Below, piece after piece: positions 40,610-64,000 of a DNA stretch of 64,000 nucleotides. Positions within the stretch are counted from its first letter, which is position 1. Every line of letters begins with the position of its first letter. The notes beneath the pieces are model-generated. The model was not told where the DNA came from. It saw only the letters and a program-made list of their open reading frames with translations, and searched no databases. Made by a program: the position numbers and the translations under genes. Source of the stretch: Macrostomum lignano (Eukaryota); assembly GCA_002269645.1 (NCBI GenBank), contig NIVC01001134.1, forward strand, positions 289,691-353,690. The letters run 5' to 3'.

Positions 40610-41188
40610 GAATCGGAGGCTTCCCAAATCGCAGCCCTGGAGCGCCAGGAGCTCGCCAGCCCGCCGCTAGACAATCAGCAAGCAGGCCGCCTGCTGCTGC
40701 TCTACCTGCTTAGCGGCGACCTGTGCAATGCGCGCCTGTTATGGCGCCGGACTCCTCAGGCGCTGCGCTCCGGCGCCAGCCAGCCTCTGGCTAATATCTG
40801 GCGCTGCGGCGCCGCGCTGTTCTCGCGCGACTATTCAACATTCTACACAGCTGCGGCGGACGCGGCTGCCTCGACAGCGGCGCCGATGCCACCGGATCTG
40901 GCCGACCTGCTGGCAAGGCTGGTGACGAAGACCCGGCGGGATCGCGCCGCCGCCCTGGCCGCCGCCTACTCCTGCATCGGCCGCGCCCGCCTCGCCAAGG
41001 AGGTCGGCGTGTCGCCCAGCGGCGTCGCCGAAGCCCTGCCCAACTGGCGAGTCGGCCCCGACCAGGGCGACAGCGGCTTCCTGGCCCCGCCTGAGCCCGC
41101 CGCCACCGCCGCCGATGCCCCGCTGATGGACACCTTTGAAGCTATTCAGAAACTCAGCGCCACCATCGGCTTTGTGGAGAACCACTGA
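40610..41188 (+). CDS. COPS8: COP9 signalosome subunit 8; coding exon has no genomic ATG
   Basis: ERQELASP...LLLLYLLSGDLCNARLLWRRTP...IWRCGAALFSRDYSTFY...AAAYSCI...IQKLSATIGFVEN parallels CSN8 ([45 protein letters not shown]). Acceptor TTTCCAG ends at 40609. Confidence 0.9.
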   Translation, partial: ESEASQIAALERQELASPPLDNQQAGRLLLLYLLSGDLCNARLLWRRTPQALRSGASQPLANIWRCGAALFSRDYSTFYTAAADAAASTAAPMPPDLADLLARLVTKTRRDRAAALAAAYSCIGRARLAKEVGVSPSGVAEALPNWRVGPDQGDSGFLAPPEPAATAADAPLMDTFEAIQKLSATIGFVENH

Positions 41189-42305: not shown

Positions 42306-42453
42306 TTTTTATTGTCTTATTATTATCCCATTTTGAATCTCTATTAATCTTTTCTCATCTCCTATATCCTAAAATCCTCCCCAATCCGACAGTCATCAGC
42401 TCGTGTTCATCCGTCCCTTTGCTGTCTGTTTGTCCTTCAGCCATCCCGTCCAG

Positions 42454-44177
42454 ATGGCAAGCGAAAAAGAGCCGCGAGACGGGCAGCAGTCGCCGCCGCA
42501 GCCGCAGGGCACGAATGAACCGATCCAGCCGGCCTTGTTGCCATGCCAACCAGCCGCGGCTGGGACGCCGCTAGCCGCCGGTCAGCTGGTGCTGGTGCGG
42601 CACGGGGAGTCAGTTGCCAACGCCAACAGGGAGCTGAGCGGCTGGCAGGACTCAGCGTTGACCAGCCAGGGCGAGGCGCAGGCACTCTGCGTTGCTAGGC
42701 AACTGCGCGAGGCCAACTGGTCGCCTGAGCTGGCCTTCTGCAGCGTCCTGCAGCGGGCCAGGAGGACCTGTCAGATCATCTGCTGCCAGCTGAGCCCTGC
42801 CGCCACTGCCGGCTTTGAGGGCCGGGAGGTGAGATTGGACTGACTGGGATTGGTGAGATTGGACTGGCTGGGATTGGTGAGATTGGACTGGCTGGGAATG
42901 GGATGGGTGAGATTGGACTGGCTGGGATTGGTGAGATTGGACTGGCTGGGAATGGGATGGGTGAGATTGGACTGGCTGGGAATGGGATGGGTGAGATTGG
43001 ACTGGCTGGGATTGGTGAGATTGGACTGGCTATGATGGGTGAGATTTGGACTGGCTGGGTGGGATGAATGAAATTGGACTGGCTGGGAATGGGATGGGTG
43101 AGATTGGACTGGCTGGGAATGGGATGGGTGAGATTGGACTGGCTGGGAATGGGATGGGTGAGATTGGACTGGCTGGGATTGGTGAGATTGGACTGGCTAT
43201 GATGGGTGAGATTTGGACTGGCTGGGTGGGATGAATGAAATTGGACTGGCTGGGATGAATGAGATTGGACTGGCTGGGATTGGTGAGATTGGACTTGCTG
43301 GGATTGGTGAGATTGGACTGACTGGGATTGGTGAGATTGGACTGGCTGGGATTGGTGAGATTGGACTGGCTGGGATGAATGAGATTGGACTGGCTGGGAT
43401 TGGTGAGATTGGACTGGCTGGGATGGGTGAGATTGGACTGGATGGGATGGGTGAGATTGGACTGGCTGGGATGGGTGAGATTTGGACTGGCTGGGTGGGA
43501 TGAATGAGATTGGACTGGCTGGGATTGGTGAGATTTGGACTGGCTGATGGCTGGGATGAGTGAAATTGGACTGGCAGGGTGAGTGATGAGATTGGCAGGG
43601 TGAGTGATGAGATTGGCAGGGTGAGTGATGAGATTGGCAGGGTGAGTGATGAGATTGGCAGGGTGAGTGATGAGATTGGCAGGGTGAGTGATGAGAGTGC
43701 TGTCATATCATGCGAATTAATTCGTTAAACCGCGAACCGCCCCGCTGCGCACCGCAGAGCCCAGTGTGCCCAATTCAGACCTCCTGGCAGCTCAACGAGC
43801 AGATGTACGGCACCCTGGTCGGCCAGGCCAACCGCCGCGGCGTCCTGTCGGCCTGGAACGACCGGCCGCCGCCGCTGGCCCGCAGCGACCCCCTGTGGCC
43901 GGGCCACGAGGCCAAATATGACGGCGTGCCGCGGGACCTGCTGCCCGAGTCCGAGACCTGCCTGGAGGCCTTCGACCGGGTGCGCGGCTACTTTGCCAAG
44001 GCCATCGCGCCGCAGGTGCTGGCCGGCCGCCGGGTGCTTTGGGTCGGCCATGGCGGTGTCTTTCACTCGTTTGTGCTGCGAACTGTCGGCCAGAATGTGC
44101 ACTTTGTCAACTGCCAGCCCTACCTGCTGCTGCTCAACCGCCACGGCTGGCCTGTCGGTATTGAGTCCTGCTTCTGA
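42454..44177 (+). CDS. Cofactor-dependent phosphoglycerate mutase-like (histidine phosphatase branch 1) protein, exons 42454-42828 and 43758-44177; 264 aa
   Basis: LVLVRHGES, LSGWQDSALT, FCSVLQRARRT, SWQLNEQMYG, LPESET, RVLWVGHG; phase-0 splice sites. Confidence 0.85.
42829..43700. repeat. Intronic 21-30-bp repeat whose unit begins with a GTGAG splice donor
   Basis: Unit GTGAGATTGGACTGGCTGGGATTG; terminal sub-array GTGAGTGATGAGATTGGCAGG. Confidence 0.93.
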
Positions 44178-47788: not shown

Positions 47789-48582
47789 ATGGCCCCCTGG
47801 TCGGGTTTTATTGATAGAGTCTCTCGCCGGCTCCTGGCTACGCAGGTGGTGCGCCTGATGCTGCGTTATCAATTTGGCACAGCCCTGCTTGGCGGCCTGT
47901 TCTGCGGTGCCGGACTTGAGTTTTTTATGAATGTCTGGAGCCCGAGGGATATCACTTTCTGTGAGTTCAACTGGCTTAGTTCACTCTGCTTACACGAAAC
48001 TGTACACGTACTTAGCCTAGTGTACACACTTGCGAATCCCATCACCCCACACTAAACTCTACCCCCAATGTACACAACTCGTGAACCCCCTCACCCCACA
48101 GTAAACTCTGCCCCCAATGTACACAACTCGTGAACCCCCTCACCCCACAGTAAACTCTGCCCCCAATGTACACACTTGCGAACCCCTCACCCCACAGTAA
48201 ACTCTGCCCCCAATGTACACACTTGCGAACCCCTCACCCCACACTAAACTCTACCCCCAATGTACACACTTGCGAACCCCTCACCCCACAGTAAACTCTG
48301 CCCCCAATGTACACACTTGCGAACCCCTCACCCCACACTAAACTCTGCCCCCAATGTACACTACCGCGAACCCTCATAAGTAACCTAAAGCAAAGCTTTG
48401 CCCTAAAAGAACAGCCAAACGTGGCCTTCGCAGACAAAATATTCAAGCGCAAGCAAATCGAACGGCAGCTTCAGCTGGAGGAGGCGGCCGAGAGTCCCGA
48501 ACGGCAGCGGCTGTACGAGCAGTTGCGGGCGGAGATCCGCCAGGAGCTGATCGCCTCAGCTGTCAGCAGAGATAAAACCTGA
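47789..48582 (+). CDS. SMIM4: SMIM4/UQCC5-like small mitochondrial membrane protein, exons 47789-47960 and 48434-48582; 106 aa
   Basis: GLFCGAGLEFFMNVWSPRDITF|YKIFKRKQIERQLQ resembles SMIM4 FFVLGGTMEWIMIKVRVGQETFYDVYRRKASERQYQ; phase-1 intron GTGAGT...TTCGCAG. Confidence 0.7.
48030..48360. repeat. 47-bp minisatellite filling the SMIM4-like intron
   Basis: Units at 48165, 48212, 48259 and onward. Confidence 0.93.
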
Positions 48583-49012: not shown

Positions 49013-49999
49013 TCACCAGTCTTGGCCGATGCCGTTGCCGAAATGCAAGCTGTATTCCATCTCGAGAAGCAGCTTCAGATCGTCCAGGTTGAGGCCTTGC
49101 CTCTGCAGCCACCTGTCCAGCTTGGCCAGCAACTTCTGGATGATGTCGTCCACCGGCGGCTCCACCGGCGGTTCTACCGGCCGCTGCTGCCAATGACGGC
49201 GTCGGCAGCGGCGTCGGCGGCGTCGGCATCTGCGGCCACGGCGACCACGCGGGCAGTCCCAGTTGCATTTTGGCGGCTCCGGCGCCTCAGTGGTTGTAGC
49301 GCCTGTTGTCACTTCGGTGGTTGTTGTGGTCGCTTCGGTGGTTGTTGTCGGCGCTTCAGTGGTTGTTGTCGGCGCTTCGGAGGTTGTTGTCGGCGCTTCG
49401 GTGGTTGTTGTCGGCGCTTCGGAGGTTGTTGTCGGCGCTTCGGTGGTTGTTGTCGGCGCTTCGGTGGTTGTTGTCGGCGCTTCGGAGGTTGTTGTCGGCG
49501 CTTCGGTGGTTGTTGTCGGCGCTTCGGTGGTTGTCGGCGCTTCGGAGGTTGTTGTCGGCGCTTCGGTGGTTGTTGTCGGCGCCTCAGTGGTTGTTGTCGG
49601 CGCCTCAGTGGTTGTCGGCGCCTCAGTGGTTGTTGTCGGCGCTTCAGTGGTTGTTGTTAGCGCTTCGGTGGTTGTTGGCGGCGCCTTAGTGGTTGTTGTC
49701 TGTGCCTCAGTGGTTGTTGCTGCTGCTACGCCACAGGAGCCCTTTGCCTCGCAGTTGGACTTGAGACTTTTCTCCAGGTTGGCCCGGTAGGCCGCTCTGC
49801 CAGTTTCGCTCGTGCAAGTGGCGCTGGTGGACATCTGGTTGCAGAAGGCGTTCACCCGCTCCAAGCTGTAGAGTCGCAGGCAGCTCATGCACGCGTTGCA
49901 AGTGCTGCTGGCGATGCAGGTTCGAACGTCCGTTGCGGCGGTCGCCAGTGGAGCAGCCGTCGCTGCTAGAAGCAGCAAGGTGGACAGACAAAAAATCAT
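49013..49999 (-). CDS. Secreted protein, 328 aa: signal peptide, 8-Cys domain, Thr-rich mucin repeats (TTTEAP), Arg/Cys-rich segment, helical C-terminus
   Basis: Hydrophobic N-terminus MIFCLSTLLLLAATAAPLATA; uninterrupted ORF; TATA box upstream and AATAAA downstream. Confidence 0.85.
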   Translation of the reverse strand: MIFCLSTLLLLAATAAPLATAATDVRTCIASSTCNACMSCLRLYSLERVNAFCNQMSTSATCTSETGRAAYRANLEKSLKSNCEAKGSCGVAAATTTEAQTTTTKAPPTTTEALTTTTEAPTTTTEAPTTTEAPTTTTEAPTTTTEAPTTTSEAPTTTEAPTTTTEAPTTTSEAPTTTTEAPTTTTEAPTTTSEAPTTTTEAPTTTSEAPTTTTEAPTTTTEATTTTTEVTTGATTTEAPEPPKCNWDCPRGRRGRRCRRRRRRCRRRHWQQRPVEPPVEPPVDDIIQKLLAKLDRWLQRQGLNLDDLKLLLEMEYSLHFGNGIGQDW

Positions 50000-50076
50000 A
50001 TTTTACCTTCAAGTGTAGTCTTATTTTACTGAAGAAACCAGTCAGAACTCGAGCAGCTTTTTCTCATAAATCGGAG

Positions 50077-50084
50077 CTTTTATA
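50077..50084 (-). promoter_or_regulatory. TATA box (TATAAAAG) of the mucin-like gene
   Basis: Consensus match 77 nt upstream of ATG 49999. Confidence 0.65.
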
Positions 50085-50784
50085 ACCGCCTTGAGCTGTC
50101 CACTTCCTGCACCTGGTCCGCAACGGTTTCAGCCGATTTGGAGCAATTCCGGGATTTCAATTTCCTGTTTCACCCTTGAGGATCTTTCCGGAGGTTGAAT
50201 GCAGTTTCAATAAGGAAGGCAGAACAAGTTCTCAGCTTACGGGCTAAGTCCATGAGATTGCATATGTTAAAACTTTGAGAATTTCAGAGGCGAGTTTATT
50301 GCAGAAAAAAAGTTCTGTGGACTATTTTTGCTAAAGCTGAAGTTAAATTCTCCAACTGGGATTAATGTCAAGGTTGACATTGTATCAGTGGAATGCGTGG
50401 CATTGTTTGGAACACCTGCATCTGCCATGCGTACAAGTGCAAATTGTTTGTTCATGCATTATGAGGGTTTTGCAAGATGCGGAAATACGACTTCAATTCG
50501 TTGGGAAATTTACACAGCGAAAAATTCTGATCATTGGTAAATTTGCACACACACACACAACTTCATTTTGTAAGTGCCCGACCTCATCAATAGCTAACCT
50601 GCCCACTGTTGCCAGCTGTTTGTGCGCATAAAATTTTGTAAATCGGTTAACATGTTTTGCTGAGATGTCCCTACAAATATAGGTCACTAACAGTAAAGTA
50701 GTGGAACAACATGATGGTGTCAACGTTTCTTGGAGTACTCTGTGACCGCGGCAGTAAACGATAGGCAATTAGACAGCTAAGTTT

Positions 50785-53700
50785 TTATTCGCTGACTTCC
50801 TCAAAATATGCAGGCCGACCCATGCTCTGCAGCGGTATGCTCTCGCAGGCCTGAAATTTGTTTCAGATTTTTCTACTAGCTTATTCATGTCGACTCGCTG
50901 AGACTTACAGTGGGGGAATGAGTACATTAGGTGGGTCTAAGAATTAAGAAAACGACACGCTAGGGACTTCTGGGAAGGAAGGGACACACTAGGGGGTTCT
51001 GGAAAAGAAGAGACACACTAGTGGGTTCTGGGAAGGAAGAGACACACTAGGGGGTTCTAGAAAAGAAGAGACACACTAGTGGGTTCTGGGAAGGAAGGGA
51101 AACACTATATAGGGACTTCTGGAAAGGAACGGACACACTGGGGACTTCTGGGAAGGCAGAGACACTAGGGACTTCTGGGAAGGAACGGACACACTGGGGA
51201 CTTCTGGGAAGGCAGAGACACTAGGGACTTCTGGGAAGGAAGAGACACACTAGGGACTTCTGGGAAGGAAGAGACACACTAGGGACTTCTGGGAAGGAAG
51301 AGACACACTAGTGGGTTCTGGGAAAGAAGAGACACACTAGTGGGTTCTGGGAAAGAAGAGACACACTAGTGGGTTCTGGGAAAGAAGAGACACACTAGTG
51401 GGTTCTGGGAAGGAAGAGACACACTAGGGGGTTCTGGGAAGGAAGAGACACACTAGTGGGTTCTGGGAAAGAAGAGACACACTAGGGGGTTCTGGGAAGG
51501 AAGAGACACACTAGGGGGTTCTGGGAAAGAAGAGACACACTAGTGGGTTCTGGGAAAGAAGAGACACACTAGGGGGTTCTGGGAAAGAAGAGACACACTA
51601 GTGGGTTCTGGGAAAGAAGAGACACACTAGTGGGTTCTGGGAAAGAAGAGACACACTAGGGGGTTCTGGGAAGGAAGGGACACACAAAGGACTTTGGGAA
51701 GCGAGAGGCACGACTAACTTCTGGGTTTTCTGTGGGTTTCTTCTGTAAGAAGCTGGGGGGGGGGGGTTCTGTGAAAGCAAAAATAGCATCTCACTTCCAT
51801 TGTCTCCCGATCGTCCCGCAGGCGTTGGCTCCCTCCGCGGGTTCTCCCTGCCGTCAGTCGCTCATTGAGATCCCTCCTGCTCCTACGTGCCGACCTTTGC
51901 TGAGACCTGTAGTCTGCTAGCTGAGGTGGACTGGCGCTGTTGTTGTTGTTGATGCCATTGCTAGCCGTGTTGTCCCTGCTGCCTCTGAAGGCCATTCGCG
52001 GCCGGTTTCCAGCATCCAGCCAGGCTGCCAAGTGCAGCTTCCTGGCCTGGCGTCGCAACTCGTTCCGGACCTCGGAGTTGATAAAACAGAACAGCAGGGC
52101 GGCGAAAAAGCCCTGTGGATTGTCGGAGATGAAGATAGTGTTCCTCCAAGAAAAAAGCGTAATTGAGGCTAAACAAGCTCGATGCATTGCAGGAGCTCAT
52201 ACATGTCTACATGTACCAAGACAAGAGACAGAGGCCTACACCAAGAAACGTACAAATTGCTGCGTACGAGTGCTCCATAGGTCTTTATATCGAATTGTTC
52301 CCAATCAATATCAACCTTTGACTTACCTGGAATGAGTTAAAGAAGTGCTCATAATAGAGGTGCACAATAGTTAGCGTTTTGCCCAGCTTGTCCTTGGGCA
52401 CCATGGTGACGGGTAGAAAGATGAGATAGTAAATGCCGAACACCAGGATGAGGAGGCAGGTAGACTTCCACAGCTTCCTGGGAATGTCGGACAGATTTTG
52501 GTGCCTCTTTGAAGTATCGAAATTCGAAACTTTATACCTTGAGAGATACGCCTCATATTCTCTTCTTGCTACTCTTTAGTGAACAAACTCGTATGTAGTT
52601 AACAACACGTAGAAAGCCAAATGCATTCGGGGCTTCTGGGCGAAAATTGGCTGAGGTCTTGTCGTGCAATTCATGTCCACGAGGGCCAACCCCCAGGGCA
52701 CAGAGTGTACATGTCTGATAATTAGAAAGTCAGGGCTGCACTACACCCTGTGTGAGCGAGTGCATGAGTGCCTGTCTGTGTACAGTATTGGCGCGCTTGC
52801 ATGTGCTCAGGTGTCAAGGGAGTTGGGAGAATTGCCTCAGCATCTCGGGGATCTCAGGACGAAGTTGTCGCCAAAAGCGTTGTGCCAGGGTGCCGGCAAT
52901 TTATTATATAATATTATTATTGACGCTTATTGAACATCATCAGGACTCACAAATAGGGCTGAACTGTCGGTGCATCGGCTGGCGCCTGCCGTCTCAGCTT
53001 GATGAAGAGCTCGCGCACAATTTTCGCGAACAGAATGGCGTTCAGCTGCGGAGAAATTTTTTTGTTTGTGTGCACGGATGCAGAGTTTGTGGTCGACTGG
53101 TTGAAGTTTTCTGCTGCTTGTGATGATTAATCTTTCTGTACTGCGAGTAGCTAGATGGTTCAACTACTTATTATGTCCCTGTGAACGTCTCCCATACATG
53201 TAGACAGACAAAAATATGATTTCAAAGTGGTCGTGCAATGCTAAGTCTGAACTCATTAATAAATCATTCTGAAAAAAGTGACACCCATGCAGTGACAGTG
53301 GCGAAATGCAATTTTACTGAAGTCCCCGAAAAGACTCGAGAGTGTGCCGGCCATTGGGCCAGCAGTGCTCACCAGCACTAGCAGCGCCAAGTAGACGTTG
53401 AGCAGCCAGATGTCGGGGCCAAGCGGCTTGAACTCGCGCCAGCAGTTCGTGTTGTCAAACAGCAGTCTGAGCAGCACCCAGACCATCGTGACTAGACTGC
53501 TCAGGCCTAAAATGTAAATAAATAGATAAAATTGTGACTTATTTGAGTTCTATCTGATGACTCATTTGAGATCTATCCTGTGACTCATTTGAGTCCTATC
53601 TTGTGACTCATTTGAGATCTATCTTGTGACTCATTTTTGAGATGTACCTTGTGACTTATTTGAGTCCTATCTTGTGACTTATTTGAGTTATATCTGATGA

Positions 53701-55468
53701 CTCATTTTTGAGATGTACCTTGTGACTCATTTGAGATCTATCCTGTGACTTATTTGAGTTATATCTGATGACTTATTTGAGTTATGTCTGATGACTTATT
53801 TGAGTTATGTCTGATGACTTATTTGAGTTATGTCTGATGACTTATTTGAGTTATGTCTGATGACTTATTTGAGTTATGTCTGATGACTTATTTGAGTTAT
53901 GTCTGATGACTTATTTGAGTTATGTCTGATGACTTATTTGAGTTATATCTGATGACTTATTTGAGTTATGTCTGATGACTTATTTGAGTTATGTCTGATG
54001 ACTTATTTGAGTTATGTCTGATGACTTATTTGAGTTATGTCTGATGACTTATTTGAGTTATGTCTGATGACTTATTTAAGATCTATCTTGTGACTCATTT
54101 GAGATCTGTCCTGAGGCTTATTTGAGATCTATCTTGTGACTCATTTGAGATTCATTTTGTGACTCATTTAAGATCTATCTTGTGACTTATTTGAGATCCA
54201 TCTTGTGACTCAAGTGACTCATTTGAGATCTATCTTGTGACTTATTTGAGTCCTATCCTGAGACTCATTAGAGATCTATCTTGTAACACATTTGAGATCT
54301 ATCTTGTGACTCATTTGTGATCTGTTTTGTTAAGTTTGTGATTAAAATTATGGCTCATTTTGTATCCATATTATGGCGCCTAAGTTCTAAGTCCTGCGTG
54401 TACTTTAAATAATCGCAAACTGCCCGAGTCAGACACTAACCCCAGCCAATGGCAAGGTAGCCGGGCGTTGACAGTCGTTCGTTGCCCATGCCGCTGACAA
54501 AGATCAGTATGTACAGGTGCAGGGCCTCGACAAAGACCCAGGTGAAACTCCCAATCACTGTGAAGGTCATTAACGTTTGGTTAAGCCGACACAGAGTTGT
54601 CTGAAATTTTTATGGCGAAAAATGATACCTATATAGCTCTTTACTTGCTACTGACAAACACTCAGCGCTAGTAGTATCAACTTCATTTTTCCAAAAATCT
54701 TTAGAAACTGCTTTACGCTTTAAAGACGCTCGGCTTACCTGATCGTTCTCAGACAAGGCCCTGTTAACAAAATGGCTGACTGCTCGCAGCGTGAATGCCA
54801 AGTACAAATTGATGTGGATGAAGTTGCGACGGCAGTGAAGGCGCCTGTAGAAAGGAAAGGAGGTGATGGCACGATAAGCATGTGCAGTTGGGAGCCAGAA
54901 AAGGAATGGAAAGAGTACATTTTCCAACAGTGGAGCATGTACAGGCAGAGATATTCTACAGTGAAAATTTTGCTAGCTAATAGGATGCCAGGTAGGACCA
55001 TAGACAACAGCCCTTTTTACTTATTCAAGAAGATGCAATAAAAGTTTGGTATTCTCCGACAACCGAAAATTTGTACATTTAAACCTTCAGAATGCCTGAC
55101 AGTTAGAACAAAATACTCATTTAGTTTATAAATATGCTTTCACCTCTTAGAGCTACTTGACTAAATCCCCTGGCTTCGAACACGACAGGAAATGAGTTTT
55201 TTCACCCTTTGAGACGGAAAAATATTTTACCGAAAGCTCGTCAAAATAACGATGCCAATCAGCAGAGTGGATAGAGAGAGGCTGTGCCCGACCAGCCCAA
55301 TCATGCTCATGATGGCCAGGTGTCTCTGCAATTTGTTAGGTTGGAAACAACTTAGCAGACACTTGCTATGACGCACATCAACATCGAGTTACATCATGAC
55401 AGACAAGCAGACACTGAGACAGGCAATAAGACAGACAGACAGACATGCAGACAGACAGACAGACACTA

Positions 55469-55541
<73 letters not shown>

Positions 55542-55610
55542 CTAAGACAGACACACAGACAGGCAGACACTAAGACAGACACACAGACAGGCAGACACTA
55601 AGACGGACAC

Positions 55611-55677
<67 letters not shown>

Positions 55678-55756
55678 GGCAGGCAGCCAGACAGACAGAC
55701 ACTAAGACACTAAGACACTGAGACAGACAGACAGACACTAAGACAGACAGACACTA

Positions 55757-55789
<33 letters not shown>

Positions 55790-57253
55790 GGCAGACAGAC
55801 AGACAGACAGACAGGCAGACAGACAGGCAGCCAGACAGACAGACAGACAGACAGACACTAAGACACTGAGACAGACAGACAGACAGATACTAAGACAGAC
55901 AGATAGACAGGCACTAAGACAGACAGGCAGACAGACAGACAGACAAACCTTCGCAACAGCTCTTTCATCGGCAGCGGCAGCATCAAAACTTGATGAAGAG
56001 GATTCCACGGCCAGGCAGTCGGAGAAGTTGGTCCAGCCGCCCAGGTGCCAGGTGCCGTTAGCGTGGCACATCCTGGTTGCGTACCTGTCCCGCTGCACTT
56101 CATTCAAGTAGTCCGGGCAGAGCTGGCGCCCGAAAGTGCCAGCCGGCACCGTCGGCCAGCACAGAACACCGTCAAAGGCTGGACGGCAGCCGGCGGCATC
56201 CGACTGACTCTGCGACGCACCGTGCGCTTTTTTTACTTGGGCGCAGAGGTGCCTCTCCAGCCTGAGTCGAAGCTGCTGGGTCTCGTTGCTCACCTGTGTC
56301 AGGCGCACCTGTTTTTGATGGCGAGGAACCGAAATGAGTATAATAATTACATTTATGGCTGCGATTTTGTGCAGTCTGGGGCCCGCCTAACCGCAGAGAG
56401 CGGCGCTGTTCCAGGCGCTGTTCCAGGCGGTGTTCCAGGCGGTGTTTGAGACCATGCCGACAAGTAGGCTTTGTCAGACTCGCTCGAACAGCCAATTGGA
56501 ATGCCATCGCACACCTTTTTCGACGCAGCATATGACACATCTATGACACACGTATGATACAACTGTGACACATCTATGACACACCTATGATACATCTATG
56601 ACACACCTATGATACATCTATGACATACCTATGATACATCTATGACACCTGTTTAGAGACACCTGTGTTTAGACACACCTGTGACACACCTGTGACACGC
56701 CTATGATACACCTATGATACACCTATGACTCCCCTATTCACACCCTATGATACACCTATGACACGCCTGAGACACCTGTGAAACACCTAGTGAGGACACC
56801 TATGACAAAAAATCCAGAAAAAAATGCCAATGGTCTGTAGTAAATTCTCAAGAACTTTTAGCCGCTTACCAACTCGTACAGGCTTCTTGCCAGACTGGCA
56901 TTGCGCTCTGAGCAGTCGGAGTAGGCAGTGAGCGGGTGAAACTCGCCACCATCGCTGCCGCTGCTCCGCCATCGACCATCGGCCTGGCAGCGTCGTTTGG
57001 CGAAGCGCACTCGGCCTTCATTGCCGAACACCTGGCCGGGACAGGGCAGGGACGCGTCGGAGCTCGCGGGCGCCGGTGGCCAGCATAGGAAGCCGTCGAA
57101 TTGCCCGGAGCACTTGCTGGCAGCAGTGGCGGCGCCGGAGGTGGCGAGGCTCGTCAGGCGGCCCAGCGCCAGTTGAGACTGGCAGCTCTGCTCGGCCCTG
57201 CGGAGCTGCTCAACCAGTTCCTCCTGGCTCAGGCTGGGCGTGCCCTGCTGGGC
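50785..57253 (-). CDS. Class B1 (secretin-family, PTH-receptor-like) GPCR with two hormone-binding domains. Exons: 57253-56870, 56308-55949, 55325-55231, 54844-54739, 54600-54441, 53506-53373, 53045-52951, 52477-52327, 52112-51795, 50850-50785 (signal-peptide exon not found)
   Basis: FDGxLCWP and C...DG/NG.W ectodomain motifs (twice); FR|RLHCRRNFIHINL; WVFVEALHLY; IGW|G; NCW; KST...FGIYY; FFNSFQ|GFFAALLFCFINSEV. All splice phases join into one 1869-nt frame. Confidence 0.93.
50950..51720. repeat. ~30-bp minisatellite in the last GPCR intron (GGTTCTGGGAAAGAAGAGACACACTAG core)
   Basis: Direct reading. Confidence 0.94.
52615..52850 (+). mobile_element. Diverged SINE-related copy in a GPCR intron
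   Basis: GTGCAATT...GGCCAACCCCCAGGGCACA...GTGTACATG...AAAGTCAGGGC resembles the middle of the 33411 SINE. Confidence 0.45.
53530..54320. repeat. ~23-bp minisatellite (TGATGACTTATTTGAGTTATGTC) in a GPCR intron
   Basis: Direct reading. Confidence 0.93.
55400..55945. repeat. (GACA)n-based microsatellite in a GPCR intron
   Basis: Direct reading; starts at the donor GTTTGTCTGTC. Confidence 0.95.
56530..56805. repeat. 11-bp degenerate repeat (ACACCTATGAT) between the two ectodomain exons
   Basis: Direct reading. Confidence 0.85.
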
Positions 57254-57274
57254 CTGCAAGGTTATGTGGGGTCA

Positions 57275-57900
57275 GCATCTGACAACTGAAGTCCCGAATC
57301 TGACAGCTGGAGTCCCGAATCTGACAGCTGGAGTCCCGAATCTGACAGCTGGAGTCCCGAATCTGACAGCTGGAGTCCCGAATCTGACAGCTGGAGTCCC
57401 GAATCTGACAGCTGGAGTCCCGAATCTGACAGCTGGAGTCCCGAATCTGACAGCTGGAGTCCCGAATCTGACAGCTGGAGTCCCGAATCTGACAGCTGGA
57501 GTCCCGAATCTGACAGCTGGAGTTCTAAATCTGACAACTGGAGTCCCGAATCTAACAGTTGGAGTCCCGAATCTTAAAGTTGGAGTCCCGACAGTTTGAG
57601 TCCCCAATCTGACTGCTGGAGTCCCGAATCTGACAGCTGGAGTTCTAAATCTGACAACTGGAGTCCCGAATCTAACAGTTGGAGTCCCGAATCTGACAGC
57701 TGGAGTCCCGACAGTTTGAGTCCCCAATCTGACTGCTGGAGTCCCGAATCTGATAACTGGAGTCCCGAATCTGACAGTTGGAGTCCCGACAGCTGGAGTC
57801 CCGAATCTGACAGCTGGAGTCCCGACAGCTGGAGTCCCGAATCTGACAGCTGGAGTCCCGACAGCTGGAGTCCCGAATCTGACAGCTGGAGTCCCAAATC
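57275..57900. repeat. 21-bp minisatellite (CTGGAGTCCCGAATCTGACAG)
   Basis: Direct reading. Confidence 0.96.
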
Positions 57901-58579
57901 TGCTCAGACGTCAGCCAAGTAAGTTCACTCAGTGCGGACATAAATAATTCATTGGGTTCTGTTAAGGGAGCTCGGAGTGCCCGATGGCCTCAAAAGCGGC
58001 CCAGTGCAAATTCTGATTGAAAGCGGGATCAATAAAACGAAAAAACGAACAAAGGAAGATAGTCTTGTACTCTGATAATTTTTCTCGAAGAGCACAGGGA
58101 ATTGAGCTTTGCTCAGCTGGAAATGAAATCTCAAAATTCTATTTTAGCGAAGCAGAGCCCCTCAGCAGTGGCGCGGAACAGGTGTCTGTTTTGCCGGGAT
58201 TCGCTGGCTCAGTTCCTTTTATTCCTTCATGAGCCCTGGTTGAGAGTGCGAGAGAAGAGCAAAAAACAGACGGCCTACTCGCAATTTTATTGAGGCAGCT
58301 GCGACAAGATGGCTCTGCCGAAAATTCGACTGTTTGCACAGAGGGAATTCTTGATTCAACCATGAAATTCCCATCGGTTCTGCGCGGGGATATTGCACAG
58401 TCTATTTTCAACTCAAAACGGCTGTAACATCCTAAAAGAGACTGGCATCGTCTGCAGTGAAGACAGCGGGGCTAGCAAAATCAGATTGCTAATGCTACGC
58501 TCGTACTTGGTTGCAGAATCCAAAGTACACCATGTCATCATAAAATTATTCTCATTGAGCTTTGCCTTGAGATTCGAAC

Positions 58580-59265
58580 TTGTGAAGATTCGGTATTGTG
58601 AATATTCGATATTGTGAATATTTGATATTGTGAAGATTCGATATTGTGAATATTCGATATTGTGAAGACTAGATATTGTGAAGACTAGATATTGTGAAGA
58701 TTCGATATTGTGAAGATACGAATTAGTGAAGATTCGATATTGTGAAGATTCGATATTGTGAAGATTCGATATTGTGAAGATTCGATATTATGAAGATTCG
58801 ATATTGTGAAGAAGATTCGATATTTTGAAGATTCGATATTGTGAAGATTCGATATTGTGAAGATTCGATATTGTGATGATTCGATATTGGGAAGATTCGA
58901 TATTGTGAAGACTCGATATTGTGAAGATTCGATATTGTGAATATTCGATATTGTGAAGATTCGATATTGTAAAGATTCGATATTGTGAAGACTCGATATT
59001 GTGAAGATTCGATATTGTGAAGATTCGATATTGTGAAGACTCGATATTGTGAAGATTCGATATTGTGAAGCTTCGATATTGTGAAGATTCGATATTGTGA
59101 AGACTCGATATTGTGAAGATTCGATATTGTGAAGACTCGATATTGTGAAGATTCGATATTGTAAATATTCGATATTGTGAAGATTCGATATTGTGAAGAC
59201 TCGATATTGTGAAGATTCGATATTGTGAAGATTCGATATTGTAAATATTCGATATTGTTCGATAT
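58580..59265. repeat. 16-bp minisatellite (GAAGATTCGATATTGT)
   Basis: Direct reading. Confidence 0.96.
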
Positions 59266-59624
59266 TATTATGAATTTACAGACTGGAATCGACCCATGCG
59301 GGGCTCTTAGTAATGTTCTATAATGCACTAATACGTAATTCACTGTTAAAACTGAATCCTGAAAATTCTTTGAGCTGTAGTCGACTGACTCTCTATGAGT
59401 AAAGATATATTCGAGTTATTTATGAAACTTTTTACTGGCTTAGAGCAAGGATTTTTGGCACACTGATGCTCATAAATCTTATTTATCGAATGCTTCAGGA
59501 ATGACACTGAAAGTCGATGCACTGCATACAAATGAGGACCTTTCGCAGGTCTCGAATTTCGCATGCCTAAATTTGGGAAATTTCCGAAATAATAATCTCC
59601 ATATCTCCCAACGATTGTGAAGCT

Positions 59625-60320
59625 TTAAGGTCGTGAAGTTTGGGGTCGTGAAGTTTGGGGTCGTGAAGTTTGGGGATTGTGAAGTTTGGGATCGTGAAGT
59701 TTGGGGATCGTGAAGTTTGGGGTCGTGAAGTTTGGGGTCGTGAAGTTTGGGGATCGTGAAGTTTGGGATCGTGAAGTTTGTAGATTGTGAAGTTTGGGGA
59801 TTGTGAATTTGGGGATTGCGAAGTTTGGGGTCGTGAAGTTTGGGGTCGTGAAGTTTGGGAATCGTGAAGTTTGGGGATCGTGAAGTTTGGGGATTTTGAA
59901 TTTGGGGATTGTGAAGTTTGGGGATTGTGATTTGGGGATTTTGAATTTGGGGATCGTGAAATTTGGGGATCGTGAAGTATGGGGATCGTGAAGTTTGGGG
60001 ATTGTGAATTTTGGGATTGCGAAGTTTGGGGATCGTGAAGTTTGGGGATCGTGAAGTTTGGGGTCGTGAAGTTTGAGGATCGTGAAGTTTGGGGATTGTG
60101 AATTTGGGGATTGCGAAGTTTGGGGTCGTGAAGTTTGGGGTCGTGAAATTTGGGGATCGTGAAGTTTGGGGATCGTGAAGTTTGGGGATCGTGAAGTTTG
60201 GGGATCGTGAAGTTTGGGGATCGTGAAGTTTGGGAATCGTGAAGTTTGGGGATTTTGAATTTGGGGATTGTGAAGGTTGGAGATTGTGAAGTTTGGGGAT
60301 CGTAAAACGTTAGGGATTGT
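59625..60320. repeat. 16-17-bp minisatellite (GGGGATCGTGAAGTTT)
   Basis: Direct reading. Confidence 0.95.
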
Positions 60321-60824
60321 GAATATGAAATTTCAGGGATTTTAAAGTGGGGGAGCTGAGATAAATATCCTGTCTTTATGGCAAGCCGGCCCCAGTGAAG
60401 AACGCTGCATTCGAAATTGGCTCAAATTGGCGCATTTGCAGCCTCAGTTGCCTCATCACAATTATCGCCGGCAGGTTGCGCGCCAAATTCGAACTGAGGA
60501 AGCCAAGATGGAAACATGCAGGTGACTCTCAACAAGCCTGGATGCTGGGGGCTCAGCTGCAGTCAGATTTTCGATGGCCTCCTTCTTAAACCAGGCAGCT
60601 GCTTAAGCGGCCTCTTTGTTTTGGTTTGGGCGGCAGTAAAAATTGCAGAGCGGGATTCTGATCAGAGAAAAGATGCGAAAATTTTCTATCTGCAAACTAA
60701 TTGCACCGACTTCGCAGCTGCCTGATCTCGAAAATCTGGAGAGCAGAGAGAAGTGTGTTTATTATTGATTGCTTTAGCGGGCGCATTGCAGAACAGTTTC
60801 ACAGCGTTGCTGATTAAATTGGCG

Positions 60825-61975
60825 CCTGTTTCTTGATTTTGGCGCCTGCTTCTTGATTGATTTGGCCGCCTGTTCTTTATTGATTTTGGCGCTGCTTCTT
60901 TATTGATTTTGGCGCCTGCTTCTTGATTGATTTTGGCGCCTGCTTATTGATTTTGGCGCCTGCTTCTTGATTTTGCAACCTGCTTCTTGATTTTGGTGAC
61001 TTTTGTTGATTTTGGCGCCTGATTCTTGATTTTGACGCCTGCTTTTGATTTTGTTGACTTTTTGTTGATTTTGGCGCCTGATTCTTGATTTGTGCGCCTG
61101 CTTCTTGATTTTGGCGCCTGCTTCTTGATTTTGGCAACTGTTTCTTGATTTTGGCGACTGTTTCTTGATTTTGTTGACTTTTTGTTGATTTTGACGCCTG
61201 ATTCTTGATTTTGGCGCCTGCTTCTTGATTTTGGCAACTGTTTCTTGATTTTGGCGCCTGCTTCTTGATTTTGGCAACTGTTTCTTGATTTTGGCGACTG
61301 TTTCTTGATTTTGGCGCCTGATTCTTGATTTTGACGCCTGCTTCTTGATTTTGGTGACTTTTTGTTGATTTTGGGCCTGATTCTTGATTTGTGCGCCTGC
61401 TTATTGATTTTGGCGCCTGCTTATTGATTTTGGCGACTGTTTCTTGATTTTACAACCTGCTTCTTGATTTTCGCGCCTGTTTTTTTATTTTGGCCTTCTT
61501 CTTGATTTTGGCGACTGTTTCTTGATTTTGCAACCTGCTTCTTGATTTTGGCGCCTGCTTTTTTATTTTGGCGACTGTTTCTTGATTTTGGCGACTGTTT
61601 CTTGATTTTGGCGACTTTCTTGATTTTGGCGACTGTTTCTTGATTTTGCAACTGCTTCTTGATTTTGGCGCCTTCTTCTTGATTTTGGCGACTGCTTCTT
61701 GATTTTGCAACCTGCTTCTTGATTTTGGCGCCTGTTTTTTATTTTGGCGACTGTTTCTTGATTTTGGCGACTGTTTCTTGATTTTTGGCGACTGTTTCTT
61801 GATTTTGGGCCTGCTTCTTGATTTTGGCGCTGCTTCTTGATTTTGGGCCTGCTTCTTGATTTTGGCGACTGTTTCTTGATTTTGGCGACTGTTTCTTGAT
61901 TTTGGGCCTCCTTATTCATTTGGCACCTGCTTCTTAATTTTGGCGCCTGCTTCTTGATTTTGGCGCCTGCTATTT
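60825..61975. repeat. ~20-bp minisatellite (CTTGATTTTGGCGCCTGCTT)
   Basis: Direct reading. Confidence 0.95.
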
Positions 61976-62059
61976 TAGTTTTGGCAACTTATGGATTTTG
62001 TGTCCTGTTAAAGTTTCGATGGCTGTTATTTTTAATTTTTAGACTTTCGATCAAATATT

Positions 62060-62432
62060 GCCTTGAAGTGGACACATTTGCCTTGAAGTGGACACCCCAG
62101 TCTCGAAGTGAACACCCCAGTCTCGAAGTGAACACCCCAGTCTCGAAGTGAACACCCCAGTCTCAAAGTGAACACCCCAGTCTCAAAGTGCAGACACCTC
62201 GGTCTTGAAGTGGACACTTTGCCTCGAAGTGAACACCCAGTCTCGAAGTGGACACTCCTGCAGTCTCGAAGTGGACACCCCAGTCTCGTAGTGGACACCT
62301 TTGCCTCGAAGTGGACACCCAGTCTCGAAATTTGACACCCCCAGTCTGAAGTGGACACCTAGTCTCGAATTGGACCCCAGTCTCGTAGTGGACACCTTTG
62401 CCTCGAAGTGGACACCAGTCTAAAAGTGGACA
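62060..62432. repeat. ~20-bp minisatellite (CTCGAAGTGAACACCCCAGT)
   Basis: Direct reading. Confidence 0.92.
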
Positions 62433-62989
62433 CAAAATTCACAACTCAAGAATATCTGCATGTAAAGTTCAATTAGCAACAAAAAGCTCGGAATCTACCA
62501 TTGTTGCTGTGCTGGTGAAAGCGCAGATTAGCATCAGAACTTCAGTCCGCGAGCTTGTTCGCCGAAAAGCAGATGACGTCATGCTGGCGCTCATAAATAG
62601 CTTGGTGCAAGATCTGCCAGAGCCGAAGAAACAGCGTTCATCAAAGCTTTGCCGTCCAGGCAGCCTGTCCAGCTGTTTTGTCCTCAAAGATTTTCTCTTC
62701 CCTAGAAGAACTGGCTGGTTAGCAGAGCCAATCGAGGACGGCGTCATGGCCACACCATGGACTGCCGGCGGCACGGAACACTGCGTAGTCATGGAGCTCT
62801 GAGCTTAGCTATCTGGACTGGCAGCTGGAATCGCACCCAGCACAATTTCCCCACACAGTTTCTTTCAAGCAAATCTTCTACTTTCTCAAATTGGGTCTAA
62901 ACAGCACCAATATTTAGAATGAAATGTTTTTTTAACTGTGATCATTTTGTGTCAGAGTTGATCACGGATTTATCTTTGCTAAAATCAAG

Positions 62990-63045
62990 CAAACAGACAG
63001 ACAGACAGAGAGACAGACAGACAGACAGACAACAGACAGACAGAC

Positions 63046-63082
<37 letters not shown>

Positions 63083-63134
63083 AGACAGACAGACAGACAG
63101 ACGACAGACAGACAGACAGACACTAAGACAGACA

Positions 63135-63167
<33 letters not shown>

Positions 63168-63215
63168 ACACAGACAGACAGACGACACACAGACAGACAG
63201 ACAGACAGACACAGA

Positions 63216-63291
<76 letters not shown>

Positions 63292-63385
63292 CAGACAGAA
63301 CAGCACAGACAGAGACAGACAGACAGACAGACAGACACTAAGACAGACAGACAGACAGACAGACACTAAGACTAAGACATAAGAC
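62990..63385. repeat. Imperfect (GACA)n microsatellite
   Basis: Direct reading. Confidence 0.95.
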
Positions 63386-63899
63386 ACATTCTCAGCTGGA
63401 AAATCCAGATCTTTGTTCAAGCTCGAGCTCCTGCCGAGCTGCTCTGCGGGGTCGTAAACAGGCTGACCTTTGCATCAGGGGGAGAGGGGAGCTCAGTGCG
63501 CGTCGGCCACAACGAGTTGTGCAGAGCGGAAAGTTTTTAATATTTTTTCCTGCGAAAATGAGATTGGCCGGGTTCAATTCAGTAAATTTAACTGGGCTAC
63601 AGGCCACACACGCAGTGCTACTGTCTGTACTTGTAAATCTGCACGCTAGCAGTGCATGAAATAATTGTTTTCTTTAACTCTGACAGTTTCAACATGATCG
63701 TGCAAACAGCCTCTCCCGCTTCATATCTCCGCTTAATTCTCTATACAGCTGTTTCTGCTTGCTTATATAATGGAGCTCGATTGTGCGTGTTTACCTGACG
63801 GAGTTGACGTAGATAAGAAAGGTTAACAACTTTGACAAAACAAGTCTTCAATAATTGATTGATTTGAGCTGATATCACTTATTGGCGGTTTGTTTAAGT

Positions 63900-63965
63900 C
63901 GTACTGTGGGAGTCGACCTTCAAGTCGTGATTCCGACGCTCTGACCAACTAGGCTACACCCCGCC
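63900..63965 (-). pseudogene. tRNA-like head (tRNA pseudogene or SINE 5' end)
   Basis: Reverse strand reads GGTGTAGCCTAGTTGGTCAGAGCG with an A box (63945-63956) and a shortened B-box-like GGTCGACTCCC; too short for a full cloverleaf. Confidence 0.5.
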
Positions 63966-64000
63966 CGCCCGAGTAACAGTGAGAATACACATGAAAGAGA

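What the first reader, a model, noticed from the sequence alone, without database searches (positions are those of the whole stretch)
55949..57253. Class B GPCR with two complete hormone-binding ectodomains on symmetric phase-0 cassette exons
Seen: exon A (57253-56870, 384 nt) and exon B (56308-55949, 360 nt) each encode a full ectodomain with an N-terminal helix, all six Cys, FDGxLCWP, CP, xCxxD/NGxW and T-x-Y/F-SDC. Exon A helix LSQEELVEQLRRAEQSC resembles PTH1R TKEEQIFLLHRAQAQC. The two are highly diverged from each other yet both intact. Both begin and end in phase 0, and TM1 begins in phase 0, so A+B, A-only and B-only all splice in frame to one 7TM core. Known: secretin-family receptors normally have one ectodomain, which sets peptide specificity. 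Inference: either a tandem two-ligand or high-avidity receptor, or a receptor that swaps ligand specificity by mutually exclusive exon choice. This is the strongest novelty candidate in the window.
Basis: partly seen in the sequence, partly recalled or inferred. Interest (0 to 1): 0.82.

Follow-up and report, generated by a model that had tools for sequence, protein, structure and literature searches.

The report
Flatworm PTH-like receptor, two ectodomains
This is a real but so far unannotated gene of the flatworm Macrostomum lignano for a parathyroid-hormone-receptor-like G-protein-coupled receptor that carries two complete hormone-binding domains in a row; that layout is unusual, yet it already exists in calcitonin-type receptors of fish and arthropods, and nothing here shows that the two domains are swapped by splicing.

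Summary
Exons A (57253-56870) and B (56308-55949), on the minus strand, each encode a full hormone receptor domain (Pfam HRM, E 4.5e-13 and 1.6e-16). Both have canonical splice sites and are phase 0 at each end. Seven further exons downstream encode an intact secretin-family 7TM core.

The window is the last 64 kb of Macrostomum lignano contig NIVC01001134.1. No gene is called over this locus, and the signal-peptide exon was not found; it may lie beyond the contig end.

The receptor is PTH-receptor-like. The best structural matches are human PTH1R and PTH2R, and the nearest single-domain relatives are mollusc "PTH/PTHrP receptor-like" proteins.

A M. lignano paralog (UniProt A0A1I8IK20) has the same A-then-B order. 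A pairs with A' and B with B', so the domain duplication predates the gene duplication and both domains stayed intact.

The architecture is not unprecedented. RefSeq holds calcitonin/CGRP-type receptors with 2 HRMs (arthropods) or 4 HRMs (a teleost), and a PDF-receptor-like protein with 2.

The most likely reading is constitutive inclusion of both exons. Domain B would then be the canonical membrane-proximal domain and A an accessory one. Ectodomain switching by splicing remains untested, because no RNA data could be reached.

I rate this a new member of a known kind, of moderate interest.

The parts
56870..57253 (-). Exon A: the distal ectodomain (ECD-A). It has an N-terminal helix and six Cys, is phase 0 at both ends, contains no Met, and therefore needs an upstream coding exon.
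   Evidence: Sequence and translation; Pfam HRM E 4.5e-13; splice sites; PTH1R and glucagon-receptor ectodomains are the best solved matches; folds as a helix plus strands in the AF2 model.
56309..56869 (-). Intron between A and B, 561 nt, largely an 11-nt tandem repeat. A stop codon lies 9 nt into the intron (…YEL|VSG*).
   Evidence: Sequence; tandem repeat 56531-56807.
55949..56308 (-). Exon B: the membrane-proximal ectodomain (ECD-B). It has a helix, six Cys, three N-glycosylation sequons and the stalk, and is phase 0 at both ends.
   Evidence: Pfam HRM E 1.6e-16; all single-HRM homologs align to this domain; CLR, PTH2R and PTH1R ectodomains match at about 1e-11 to 1e-10.
55326..55948 (-). 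Intron between B and TM1, 623 nt, almost entirely a (GTCT)n microsatellite on the coding strand.
   Evidence: array 55429-55945.
55231..55325 (-). TM1 exon (RHLAIMSMIGLVGHSLS…). It starts in phase 0 and ends in phase 2.
   Evidence: Gene model with AG/GT sites; 7tm_2 match.
54739..54844 (-). TM2 exon (RLHCRRNFIHINLY…).
54441..54600 (-). Exon for a short ECL1, TM3 and ICL2.
53373..53506 (-). Exon for TM4, ECL2 (with the conserved Cys) and the start of TM5.
52951..53045 (-). Exon for the end of TM5 and ICL3.
52327..52477 (-). Exon for TM6 and ECL3.
51714..52112 (-). Last exon: TM7, the C-terminal tail and a TAG stop. The exact 3' end of the coding sequence is uncertain, because GAA|gtgaga inside the tail is a possible extra donor.
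57254..64000 (-). Upstream region to the contig end. It consists mostly of minisatellite arrays. No convincing Met plus signal-peptide exon was found here.
   Evidence: ATG…GT phase-0 scan; tandem repeats; window end equals contig end.

Best explanation
This is an intact gene of Macrostomum lignano, truncated at its 5' end by the contig, for a parathyroid-hormone-receptor-like class B1 (secretin-family) GPCR. Its extracellular part consists of two complete hormone receptor domains, each encoded by one symmetric phase-0 exon.

The pair arose by an old internal duplication of the ectodomain exon. That duplication predates a later duplication of the whole gene in this lineage, and both domains have been kept under purifying selection since.

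The most likely mode of operation (inferred, not shown) is as follows. Both exons are included in the main mRNA, giving signal peptide, ECD-A, a helical linker of about 35 residues, ECD-B, the stalk and the 7TM core. ECD-B is the more canonical domain and sits where the single domain of other receptors sits. It would capture the C-terminal helix of an invertebrate PTH-like (iPTH-type) peptide and deliver the peptide's N-terminus to the 7TM core, which is the standard two-domain mechanism of class B1 receptors. ECD-A would be an accessory distal module. It could add a second contact or avidity for a longer or dimeric ligand, bind a second ligand or co-factor, or modulate access to ECD-B.
For: Shown:
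- Two HRM domains and one complete 7tm_2 domain lie in one colinear, canonically spliced model.
- The window is M. lignano assembly GCA_002269645.1, contig NIVC01001134.1.
- The only close relative among 1.84 billion cluster representatives is M. lignano A0A1I8IK20 (P0001). It aligns colinearly, A-A', linker, B-B', 7TM, with only a 2-residue gap in the linker.
- Identities are A-A' 40%, B-B' 44% and A-B 33%. NJ bootstrap support is 84% for B+B', 46% for A+A' and 1% for A+B. All six Cys and the D/W/P/R/G/W core positions are present in all four domains.
- Single-HRM homologs align to ECD-B.
- The AF2 model folds both domains and the 7TM core (mean pLDDT 75). Its best structural matches are human PTH1R (E 1e-21, 35% identity) and PTH2R.
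- The nearest named single-HRM relatives are mollusc PTH/PTHrP receptor-like proteins.

By analogy:
- Multi-HRM receptors in RefSeq carry all their HRMs in one protein, and where a second isoform is listed it differs by only 15-26 residues.
- Invertebrate PTHR-like receptors are activated by iPTH peptides (bioRxiv 10.64898/2026.06.22.733765).
Against: - No transcript evidence of any kind could be reached, so co-inclusion of A and B in one mRNA is inferred.
- The paralog P0001 is an error-containing gene prediction. It lacks TM1 and TM4 and has an insert at an intron position, so its A'-B' junction may also be only predicted.
- The first coding exon with the signal peptide was not found.
- No gene is called here in the collection's annotation.
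- Exon B has a purine-rich, weak-looking acceptor (aaaaacag) and a weak donor (gtttgt). Such sites are typical of regulated exons.
- The role proposed for ECD-A is speculative.
Confidence: 0.65

Rival explanations
1. Ectodomain switching by alternative splicing. A and B would be used as alternative cassette exons or mutually exclusive exons, so that one 7TM core is paired with either ECD-A or ECD-B and changes ligand specificity.
For: - The two exons are adjacent and homologous, of similar length (384 and 360 nt) and of the same phase 0/0. All three combinations stay in frame.
- Each exon encodes a self-sufficient domain with its own N-terminal helix.
- Exon B has comparatively weak splice sites.
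- An A-only product would leave 26 residues between Cys6 and the GHS motif of TM1, which is shorter than usual but plausible.
Against: - Nothing enforces exclusivity. Co-inclusion keeps the frame, the A-B intron is 561 nt, and only short arms of 70-80% complementarity occur around the exons.
- The 3' ends of A and B, which would both have to join TM1, are unrelated: 14 versus 22 residues after Cys6, with no similarity.
- The A-to-B linker has a conserved length (35 versus 33 residues) and a partly conserved sequence in the paralog. That only matters if both domains are in one chain.
- Other multi-HRM receptors are annotated with all their domains in one protein.
Confidence: 0.15
2. Exon A is not part of the receptor. 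It would be either a relic or pseudo-exon, or part of a separate short transcript that encodes a secreted ECD-A decoy ending in the A-B intron (…YEL-VSG-stop).
For: - There is no transcript evidence for this gene.
- The signal-peptide exon was not found.
- A stop codon lies 9 nt into the intron after A.
- ECD-A is the more divergent domain and scores lower against HRM and against solved ectodomains.
Against: - A has an open 137-codon frame, all six Cys and every core residue, and canonical splice sites in phase with B.
- The same domain in the same position is intact in a paralog that is only about 40-47% identical. A neutral relic would not be expected to survive that much divergence.
- A decoy transcript would not exclude the tandem receptor.
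Confidence: 0.07
3. Assembly artefact. Two paralogous receptor genes would have been collapsed or mis-joined, so that an ectodomain exon of one gene lies in front of another gene.
For: The locus is full of tandem repeats and lies 6.7 kb from a contig end. M. lignano also has duplicated genome regions.
Against: - A and B are only about 30% identical, so they are not collapsed alleles or homeologs.
- An independent assembly and annotation (UniProt A0A1I8IK20) gives the same A'-B'-7TM order for a different paralog.
- No other HRM or 7TM fragments occur in the window.
Confidence: 0.02

Closest known systems
Macrostomum lignano uncharacterised protein A0A1I8IK20 (P0001; 'G_PROTEIN_RECEP_F2_4 domain-containing protein')
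   Same: It comes from the same species. It has the same architecture of two tandem HRM domains in the same order, a conserved linker, the same short ECL1 and Val instead of Pro in the TM6 PxxG motif. It aligns colinearly over 85% of the model.
   Different: It is a paralog, not the same gene: 38% identity in BLASTP and 47% over aligned columns, with substitutions throughout. Its model is defective (TM1 and TM4 are missing and there is an insert at an intron position). It is unstudied.
Vertebrate PTH1R/PTH2R and protostome PTH-receptor-like receptors (iPTH receptors of Tribolium and Ixodes; mollusc 'PTH/PTHrP receptor-like')
   Same: These are the best sequence and structure matches for the 7TM core and ECD-B. 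Foldseek gives PTH1R E 1e-21 at 35% identity, with PTH2R also high. phmmer against the PDB agrees. Mollusc and annelid relatives are 30-35% identical. The fold and two-domain peptide mechanism are the expected ones.
   Different: All of these have a single ectodomain, and most have a long ECL1. The flatworm receptor has a second, distal ectodomain and a very short ECL1. Its ligand is unknown.
Multi-HRM calcitonin/CGRP-type receptors: teleost (Stegastes partitus XP_008287491, 4 HRM) and arthropods (Ischnura, Centruroides, Nymphon, Cloeon, Penaeus; 2 HRM). Also a dipteran PDF-receptor-like protein with 2 HRM.
   Same: They have tandem complete HRM domains in front of one 7tm_2 core. The membrane-proximal domain is the canonical one and the distal domain(s) are more divergent. 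A cloned fish calcitonin receptor with several hormone-binding domains was, as I recall, reported by Nag et al. 2007 (Gen Comp Endocrinol 154:48). The reference was seen, but its content was not readable here.
   Different: These belong to a different receptor subfamily (calcitonin/CLR and PDF, not PTHR). The duplications appear independent: B/B' nests with PTHR-like domains, while the fish repeats cluster together. The function of the extra domains in those receptors is also largely unstudied.
N-terminal splice variants of class B1 receptors (for example alternative 5' exons of CRF2 receptor and PAC1 ectodomain variants; from my own knowledge, not checked here)
   Same: Alternative splicing in ectodomain-coding exons can change ligand selectivity.
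   Different: Those variants change short segments or the extreme N-terminus, not a whole ectodomain. No splice data exist for this gene.

Membership tests
Secretin-family (class B1) GPCR | A seven-transmembrane core of the 7tm_2 type | tested here: met
   Pfam PF00002 E 6.5e-54, covering profile positions 4-249 of 250. The AF2 model has seven long helices.
Secretin-family (class B1) GPCR | [quoted passage not shown] | tested here: met
   Present twice.
Secretin-family (class B1) GPCR | A signal peptide or other N-terminal targeting sequence | tested here: inconclusive
   No Met or signal-peptide exon was found in the 6.7 kb between exon A and the contig end.
Secretin-family (class B1) GPCR | Activation by a peptide hormone and coupling to a G protein | not testable with these tools
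   This needs heterologous expression and ligand assays.
PTH-receptor-like subfamily | Closest relatives by sequence and structure are PTH receptors | tested here: met
   The Foldseek top 14 matches are PTH1R or PTH2R. Fish PTH2R and mollusc PTH/PTHrP receptor-like proteins are among the best hits. ECD-B nests among PTHR-like domains. No full 7TM phylogeny was made.
PTH-receptor-like subfamily | Activated by PTH/iPTH-type peptides | not testable with these tools
   The iPTH ligands of arthropod PTHR-like receptors are known from the literature only.
Multi-HRM class B1 receptors | Two or more complete HRM domains encoded in tandem upstream of one 7TM core | tested here: met
   Met at the genomic level. 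The same holds in the paralog.
Multi-HRM class B1 receptors | All HRM domains present in one mature mRNA or protein | not testable with these tools
   No transcript-derived sequence for this gene or its paralog was found in the protein collections.
Mutually exclusive exon cluster | Adjacent homologous exons of similar length and identical phase | tested here: met
   384 versus 360 nt, phase 0/0, 30-33% identity.
Mutually exclusive exon cluster | A mechanism that prevents co-inclusion (frame disruption, a too-short intron, or competing RNA pairing) | tested here: not met
   Co-inclusion stays in frame. The intron is 561 nt. Only weak inverted repeats of 20-27 nt at 70-80% complementarity were found.
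Mutually exclusive exon cluster | Transcripts contain one or the other exon, never both | not testable with these tools
   No RNA data were available.

The most novel reading that the evidence does not exclude
One 7TM core is paired with either of two whole, anciently diverged ectodomains by regulated skipping of symmetric cassette exons. The isoforms would be A+B, A-only and B-only. The flatworm would then switch or combine peptide-ligand specificities from a single gene, a whole-ectodomain swap not described for any class B GPCR.
Probability: 0.1. Interest if true: 0.7.

Novelty: new member of a known kind. Interest (0 to 1): 0.35.

Why it matters
Class B1 receptors are the textbook case of [quoted passage not shown].

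Receptors with extra complete ectodomains exist in several lineages. As far as I could find in the open literature, they have not been discussed or explained.

This locus adds an apparently independent origin of that layout, in the PTH-receptor-like branch and in a flatworm. Two paralogs have kept both domains, which argues that the distal domain does something.

Macrostomum lignano is an established laboratory flatworm model (my own knowledge, not checked here). Deletion constructs (ΔA, ΔB), ligand deorphanisation and junction counting are therefore feasible, and could show what a second hormone-binding domain is for.

Practically, the gene is missing from the gene calls on this contig and should be added to flatworm GPCR inventories.

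Tried and rejected
1. Search for the first coding exon. A scan of 57254-64000 for ATG…GT phase-0 mini-exons with a hydrophobic core gave nothing credible. The window ends at the contig end.

2. Transcript or ortholog evidence.
- A full-length query and a query with the paralog's ectodomains against the word-indexed protein collection returned no transcript-derived relatives. The only extra hit was a frameshifted fragment of the paralog, mislabelled 'cytochrome b561' (P0172).
- The A+B query against the word-indexed collection failed.
- The exhaustive representative search with A+B found only P0001 as a close relative.

3. Reaching the paralog locus or the homeologous copy for dN/dS.
- P0001 is not on record in the contig index.
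- The second contig (L005) stops about 0.9 kb short of the receptor's last exon.

4. Rfam scan of the window: no hits.

5. Inverted repeats as docking or selector candidates: only weak matches.

6. Literature on tandem HRM domains. Seven of the nine literature searches were aimed at this and found no open paper describing them. Nag et al. 2007 is cited by others but is not held.

7. A third HRM exon or other receptor fragments in the window: none.

8. Common origin of ECD-A with the distal domains of arthropod calcitonin-type receptors. They group in the NJ tree but with only 17% bootstrap support, probably through shared loss of the WTNY loop or long-branch attraction. I did not adopt this idea.
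Full report
**1. What is in the sequence**

On the minus strand, 57253-56870 (384 nt) and 56308-55949 (360 nt) are open and are bounded by canonical splice signals. Exon A is bounded by ttgcag|…|gtaagc and exon B by aaaaacag|…|gtttgt.

Each translation has an N-terminal helix segment ending in Cys1, followed by the motifs C-x4-FDG-x-LCWP, CP, R-x-C-x2-(D/N)G-x-W and (Y/F)SDC. That gives six Cys per exon.

Each exon alone matches Pfam HRM (PF02793) far above the gathering score: 49.8 bits, E 4.5e-13 for A, and 60.8 bits, E 1.6e-16 for B. A profile built from 28 HRM domains hits only these two exons in all six frames of the window.

The two domains are 30-33% identical to each other.

**2. The gene around them**

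Seven further exons with AG/GT boundaries lie downstream on the same strand:
- 55325-55231
- 54844-54739
- 54600-54441
- 53506-53373
- 53045-52951
- 52477-52327
- 52112 to about 51714

Joined to A and B they give one open frame. Residues 254-498 of the model match 7tm_2 over essentially the whole profile (E 6.5e-54).

The exon lengths confirm the phases. A and B are 0/0 and TM1 starts in phase 0, so A+B, A-only and B-only are all in frame.

Neither A nor B contains a usable start codon. A has no Met at all, so an upstream exon must supply the Met and the signal peptide. A scan of the 6.7 kb upstream found no credible candidate. That stretch is almost entirely minisatellite arrays.

**3. Where the window comes from**

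A neighbouring single-exon gene (CSN8, 40610-41188, plus strand) is identical to a gene on two contigs of assembly GCA_002269645.1 (NIVC01…), which I recall to be the Mlig_3_7 assembly. The only close homolog found is a Macrostomum lignano protein, and the organism assignment rests on that hit and my recollection of the accession.

The mucin-like gene at 49013-49999 pins the window to NIVC01001134.1. Window position 1 is record position 289691, and window position 64000 is the contig end at 353690. The missing 5' exon may therefore lie beyond the contig.

In that collection no gene is called between window positions 50000 and 59999, so the receptor is unannotated there.

A second, duplicated copy of the neighbourhood lies on NIVC01000061.1. 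It is 88-93% identical in non-coding flanks. The receptor part of that copy was out of reach.

**4. Which family**

The best homologs of the full model are:
- a M. lignano protein (P0001 = UniProt A0A1I8IK20, E 2e-94);
- after it, single-HRM receptors from Capitella and Nucella, unnamed transcript-like contigs, and fish PTH2R.

The nearest named single-HRM relatives of the ectodomain are mollusc 'PTH/PTHrP receptor-like' proteins.

An AlphaFold2 model (12-sequence alignment, mean pLDDT 75, pTM 0.54) folds both ectodomains as a helix plus β-strands, together with a seven-helix core. Its best PDB matches are human PTH1R (E 1e-21, 35% identity) and PTH2R.

By sequence, ECD-B matches the solved CLR, PTH2R and PTH1R ectodomains at about 1e-11 to 1e-10. 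ECD-A matches the glucagon-receptor and PTH1R ectodomains at about 3e-7 to 3e-6, and the PTH1R alignment includes the N-terminal helix.

The receptor is thus a PTH-receptor-like class B1 GPCR. Two peculiarities are shared with its paralog: a very short ECL1, and Val in place of the TM6 PxxG proline, as in the fish PTH2R hits.

**5. Is the tandem arrangement real and old?**

P0001 aligns colinearly with the model: A to A', the inter-domain linker with a 2-residue gap, B to B', then the 7TM core. Differences are substitutions throughout (38% identity in BLASTP, 47% over aligned columns). P0001 is therefore a paralog, not the same locus.

In a domain alignment the identities are A-A' 40%, B-B' 44% and A-B 33%. 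NJ bootstrap support is 84% for B+B', 46% for A+A' and 1% for A+B.

The ectodomain duplication therefore predates the gene duplication. Since then all four domains have kept every Cys and core residue. That is hard to reconcile with exon A being a neutral relic, and it rules out an assembly collapse.

All single-HRM homologs align to ECD-B, and B/B' nest among PTHR-like domains. B is the canonical, membrane-proximal domain and A is the more derived distal one.

**6. How unusual is it?**

An exhaustive search of 1.84 billion cluster representatives with A+B found only P0001 as a close relative (E 3e-31). It also found a set of receptors with more than one HRM. Pfam scans and source names identify them as follows:
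- Four HRMs: a teleost calcitonin/CGRP-type receptor (Stegastes partitus).
- Two HRMs: calcitonin/CGRP-type receptors of a damselfly, a scorpion, a sea spider, a mayfly and a shrimp.
- Two HRMs: a dipteran PDF-receptor-like protein.

Two other multi-HRM hits are fused tandem genes, that is, model artefacts (P0014, P0017).

For the shrimp and scorpion receptors two RefSeq isoforms are listed, differing by 26 and 15 residues, which is too little to remove a domain.

From memory, a cloned pufferfish calcitonin receptor with several hormone-binding domains was reported by Nag et al. 2007. The reference exists but the paper could not be read.

The architecture is therefore a known, if neglected, kind. 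What is new is its occurrence in the PTHR-like branch and in a flatworm, apparently by an independent duplication. I found no open paper that discusses tandem HRM domains.

**7. Tandem receptor or ectodomain switch?**

No RNA-derived sequence for this gene or its paralog exists in the collections searched, so this cannot be settled here.

Arguments for constitutive co-inclusion:
- Nothing enforces exclusivity. The frame is kept, the intron is 561 nt, and only weak inverted repeats are present.
- The A-B linker is conserved in length (35 versus 33 residues) and partly in sequence between paralogs that are otherwise about 45% identical.
- The C-terminal ends of A and B, which would both have to fit TM1, are unrelated: 14 versus 22 residues after Cys6.
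- Other multi-HRM receptors are annotated with all their domains in one protein.

Arguments that keep switching alive:
- The exons meet the formal criteria for a duplicated alternative-exon pair.
- Each exon is a self-contained domain.
- Exon B's splice sites look weak.
- P0001 is a faulty prediction, so its A'-B' junction is not independent transcript evidence.

My estimates are:
- about 0.65-0.7 for a constitutive tandem receptor;
- about 0.15 for regulated single-domain isoforms, and about 0.1 for these being the main mode;
- about 0.07 for A lying outside the receptor mRNA;
- about 0.02 for an assembly artefact.

**8. Likely mechanism (inferred)**

ECD-B with its stalk sits where the single ectodomain of PTH1R sits. 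It would bind the C-terminal helix of a peptide and present the peptide's N-terminus to the 7TM core.

The ligand class expected from relatives is the invertebrate PTH-like peptide iPTH, which activates PTHR-like receptors in Ixodes (shown in that preprint), which also cites Xie et al. 2020 for Tribolium.

ECD-A is tethered by a helical linker. It could provide a second binding site (avidity, or a longer or dimeric ligand), bind another partner, or gate ECD-B. Deletion constructs would distinguish these options.

**9. Verdict**

- The locus is a new member of a known but little-studied kind, namely multi-HRM class B1 receptors.
- It is of moderate interest: an unannotated gene, an independent origin of the layout, two paralogs retaining both domains, and a tractable organism.

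Noticed in passing
window 1-64000 (= NIVC01001134.1:289691-353690): The window is the terminal 64 kb of a Macrostomum lignano contig. A duplicated copy of at least the 30-51 kb part lies on NIVC01000061.1, with 88-93% identity in non-coding sequence. This is consistent with large duplicated genome regions in this species.
   Followed up: partly
window 50000-59999: No gene is called over the receptor locus in the contig collection's annotation, although its neighbours are called. The receptor appears to be unannotated.
   Followed up: partly
window 49013-49999 (-): A single-exon gene encodes a 328-aa secreted-looking protein. It has a Cys-rich N-terminal part, a long (TTTEAPTTT)n Thr/Pro mucin-like repeat and an Arg/Cys-rich C-terminal part. 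It has no Pfam match. The copy on the other contig is 315 aa.
   Followed up: partly
window 40610-41188 (+), 42442-44177 (+), 47789-48582 (+): Three neighbouring genes: COP9 signalosome subunit 8 (PF10075), a histidine-phosphatase/PGAM-like gene (PF00300), and a small UPF0640-like membrane protein with one intron.
   Followed up: partly
window 25843-28503 (+): ORFs with an F-box-like domain (PF12937, E 4e-6) are interrupted by a Tyr/Ser/Thr/Leu-rich repeat. Further on there are leucine-rich-repeat-like sequences with no Pfam hit. This is probably one F-box gene with repeat-filled introns.
   Followed up: no
window 55429-55945, 56531-56807, 57277-57902, 58570-59258, 59631-60303, 60819-61971, 62085-62433, 62993-63365: The introns and the 5' flank of the receptor gene are packed with distinct micro- and minisatellite arrays (periods 4, 8, 11, 16, 20, 21). 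These create long spurious ORFs on both strands.
   Followed up: partly
protein P0172 (UniProt, M. lignano, named 'Cytochrome b561 domain-containing protein'): This 256-aa entry is a frameshifted fragment of the paralogous tandem-HRM receptor. It contains LQVTKVSKMLQYKRLELE and a TM1-like segment. Its name looks like a mis-annotation.
   Followed up: partly
domain tree: The distal HRM domains of arthropod calcitonin-type receptors and the flatworm ECD-A/A' group together, and all lack the W(T/S)N(Y/F) loop before Cys6. Bootstrap support is only 17%. The cause could be convergence, long-branch attraction or a shared origin.
   Followed up: partly
window 54441-54844 and 52327-52477 (-): Both Macrostomum paralogs have an unusually short ECL1. 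They also have Val instead of Pro in the TM6 PxxG motif (LILVFG), as in the fish PTH2R hits.
   Followed up: no
window 56294-56308 (-): The first 15 nt of exon B end in …acacag|gtgagc. That sequence could serve as an alternative acceptor, dropping VRLTQ in frame, or as a donor. The paralog keeps the homologous residues (RLQVT), which favours the upstream acceptor.
   Followed up: partly
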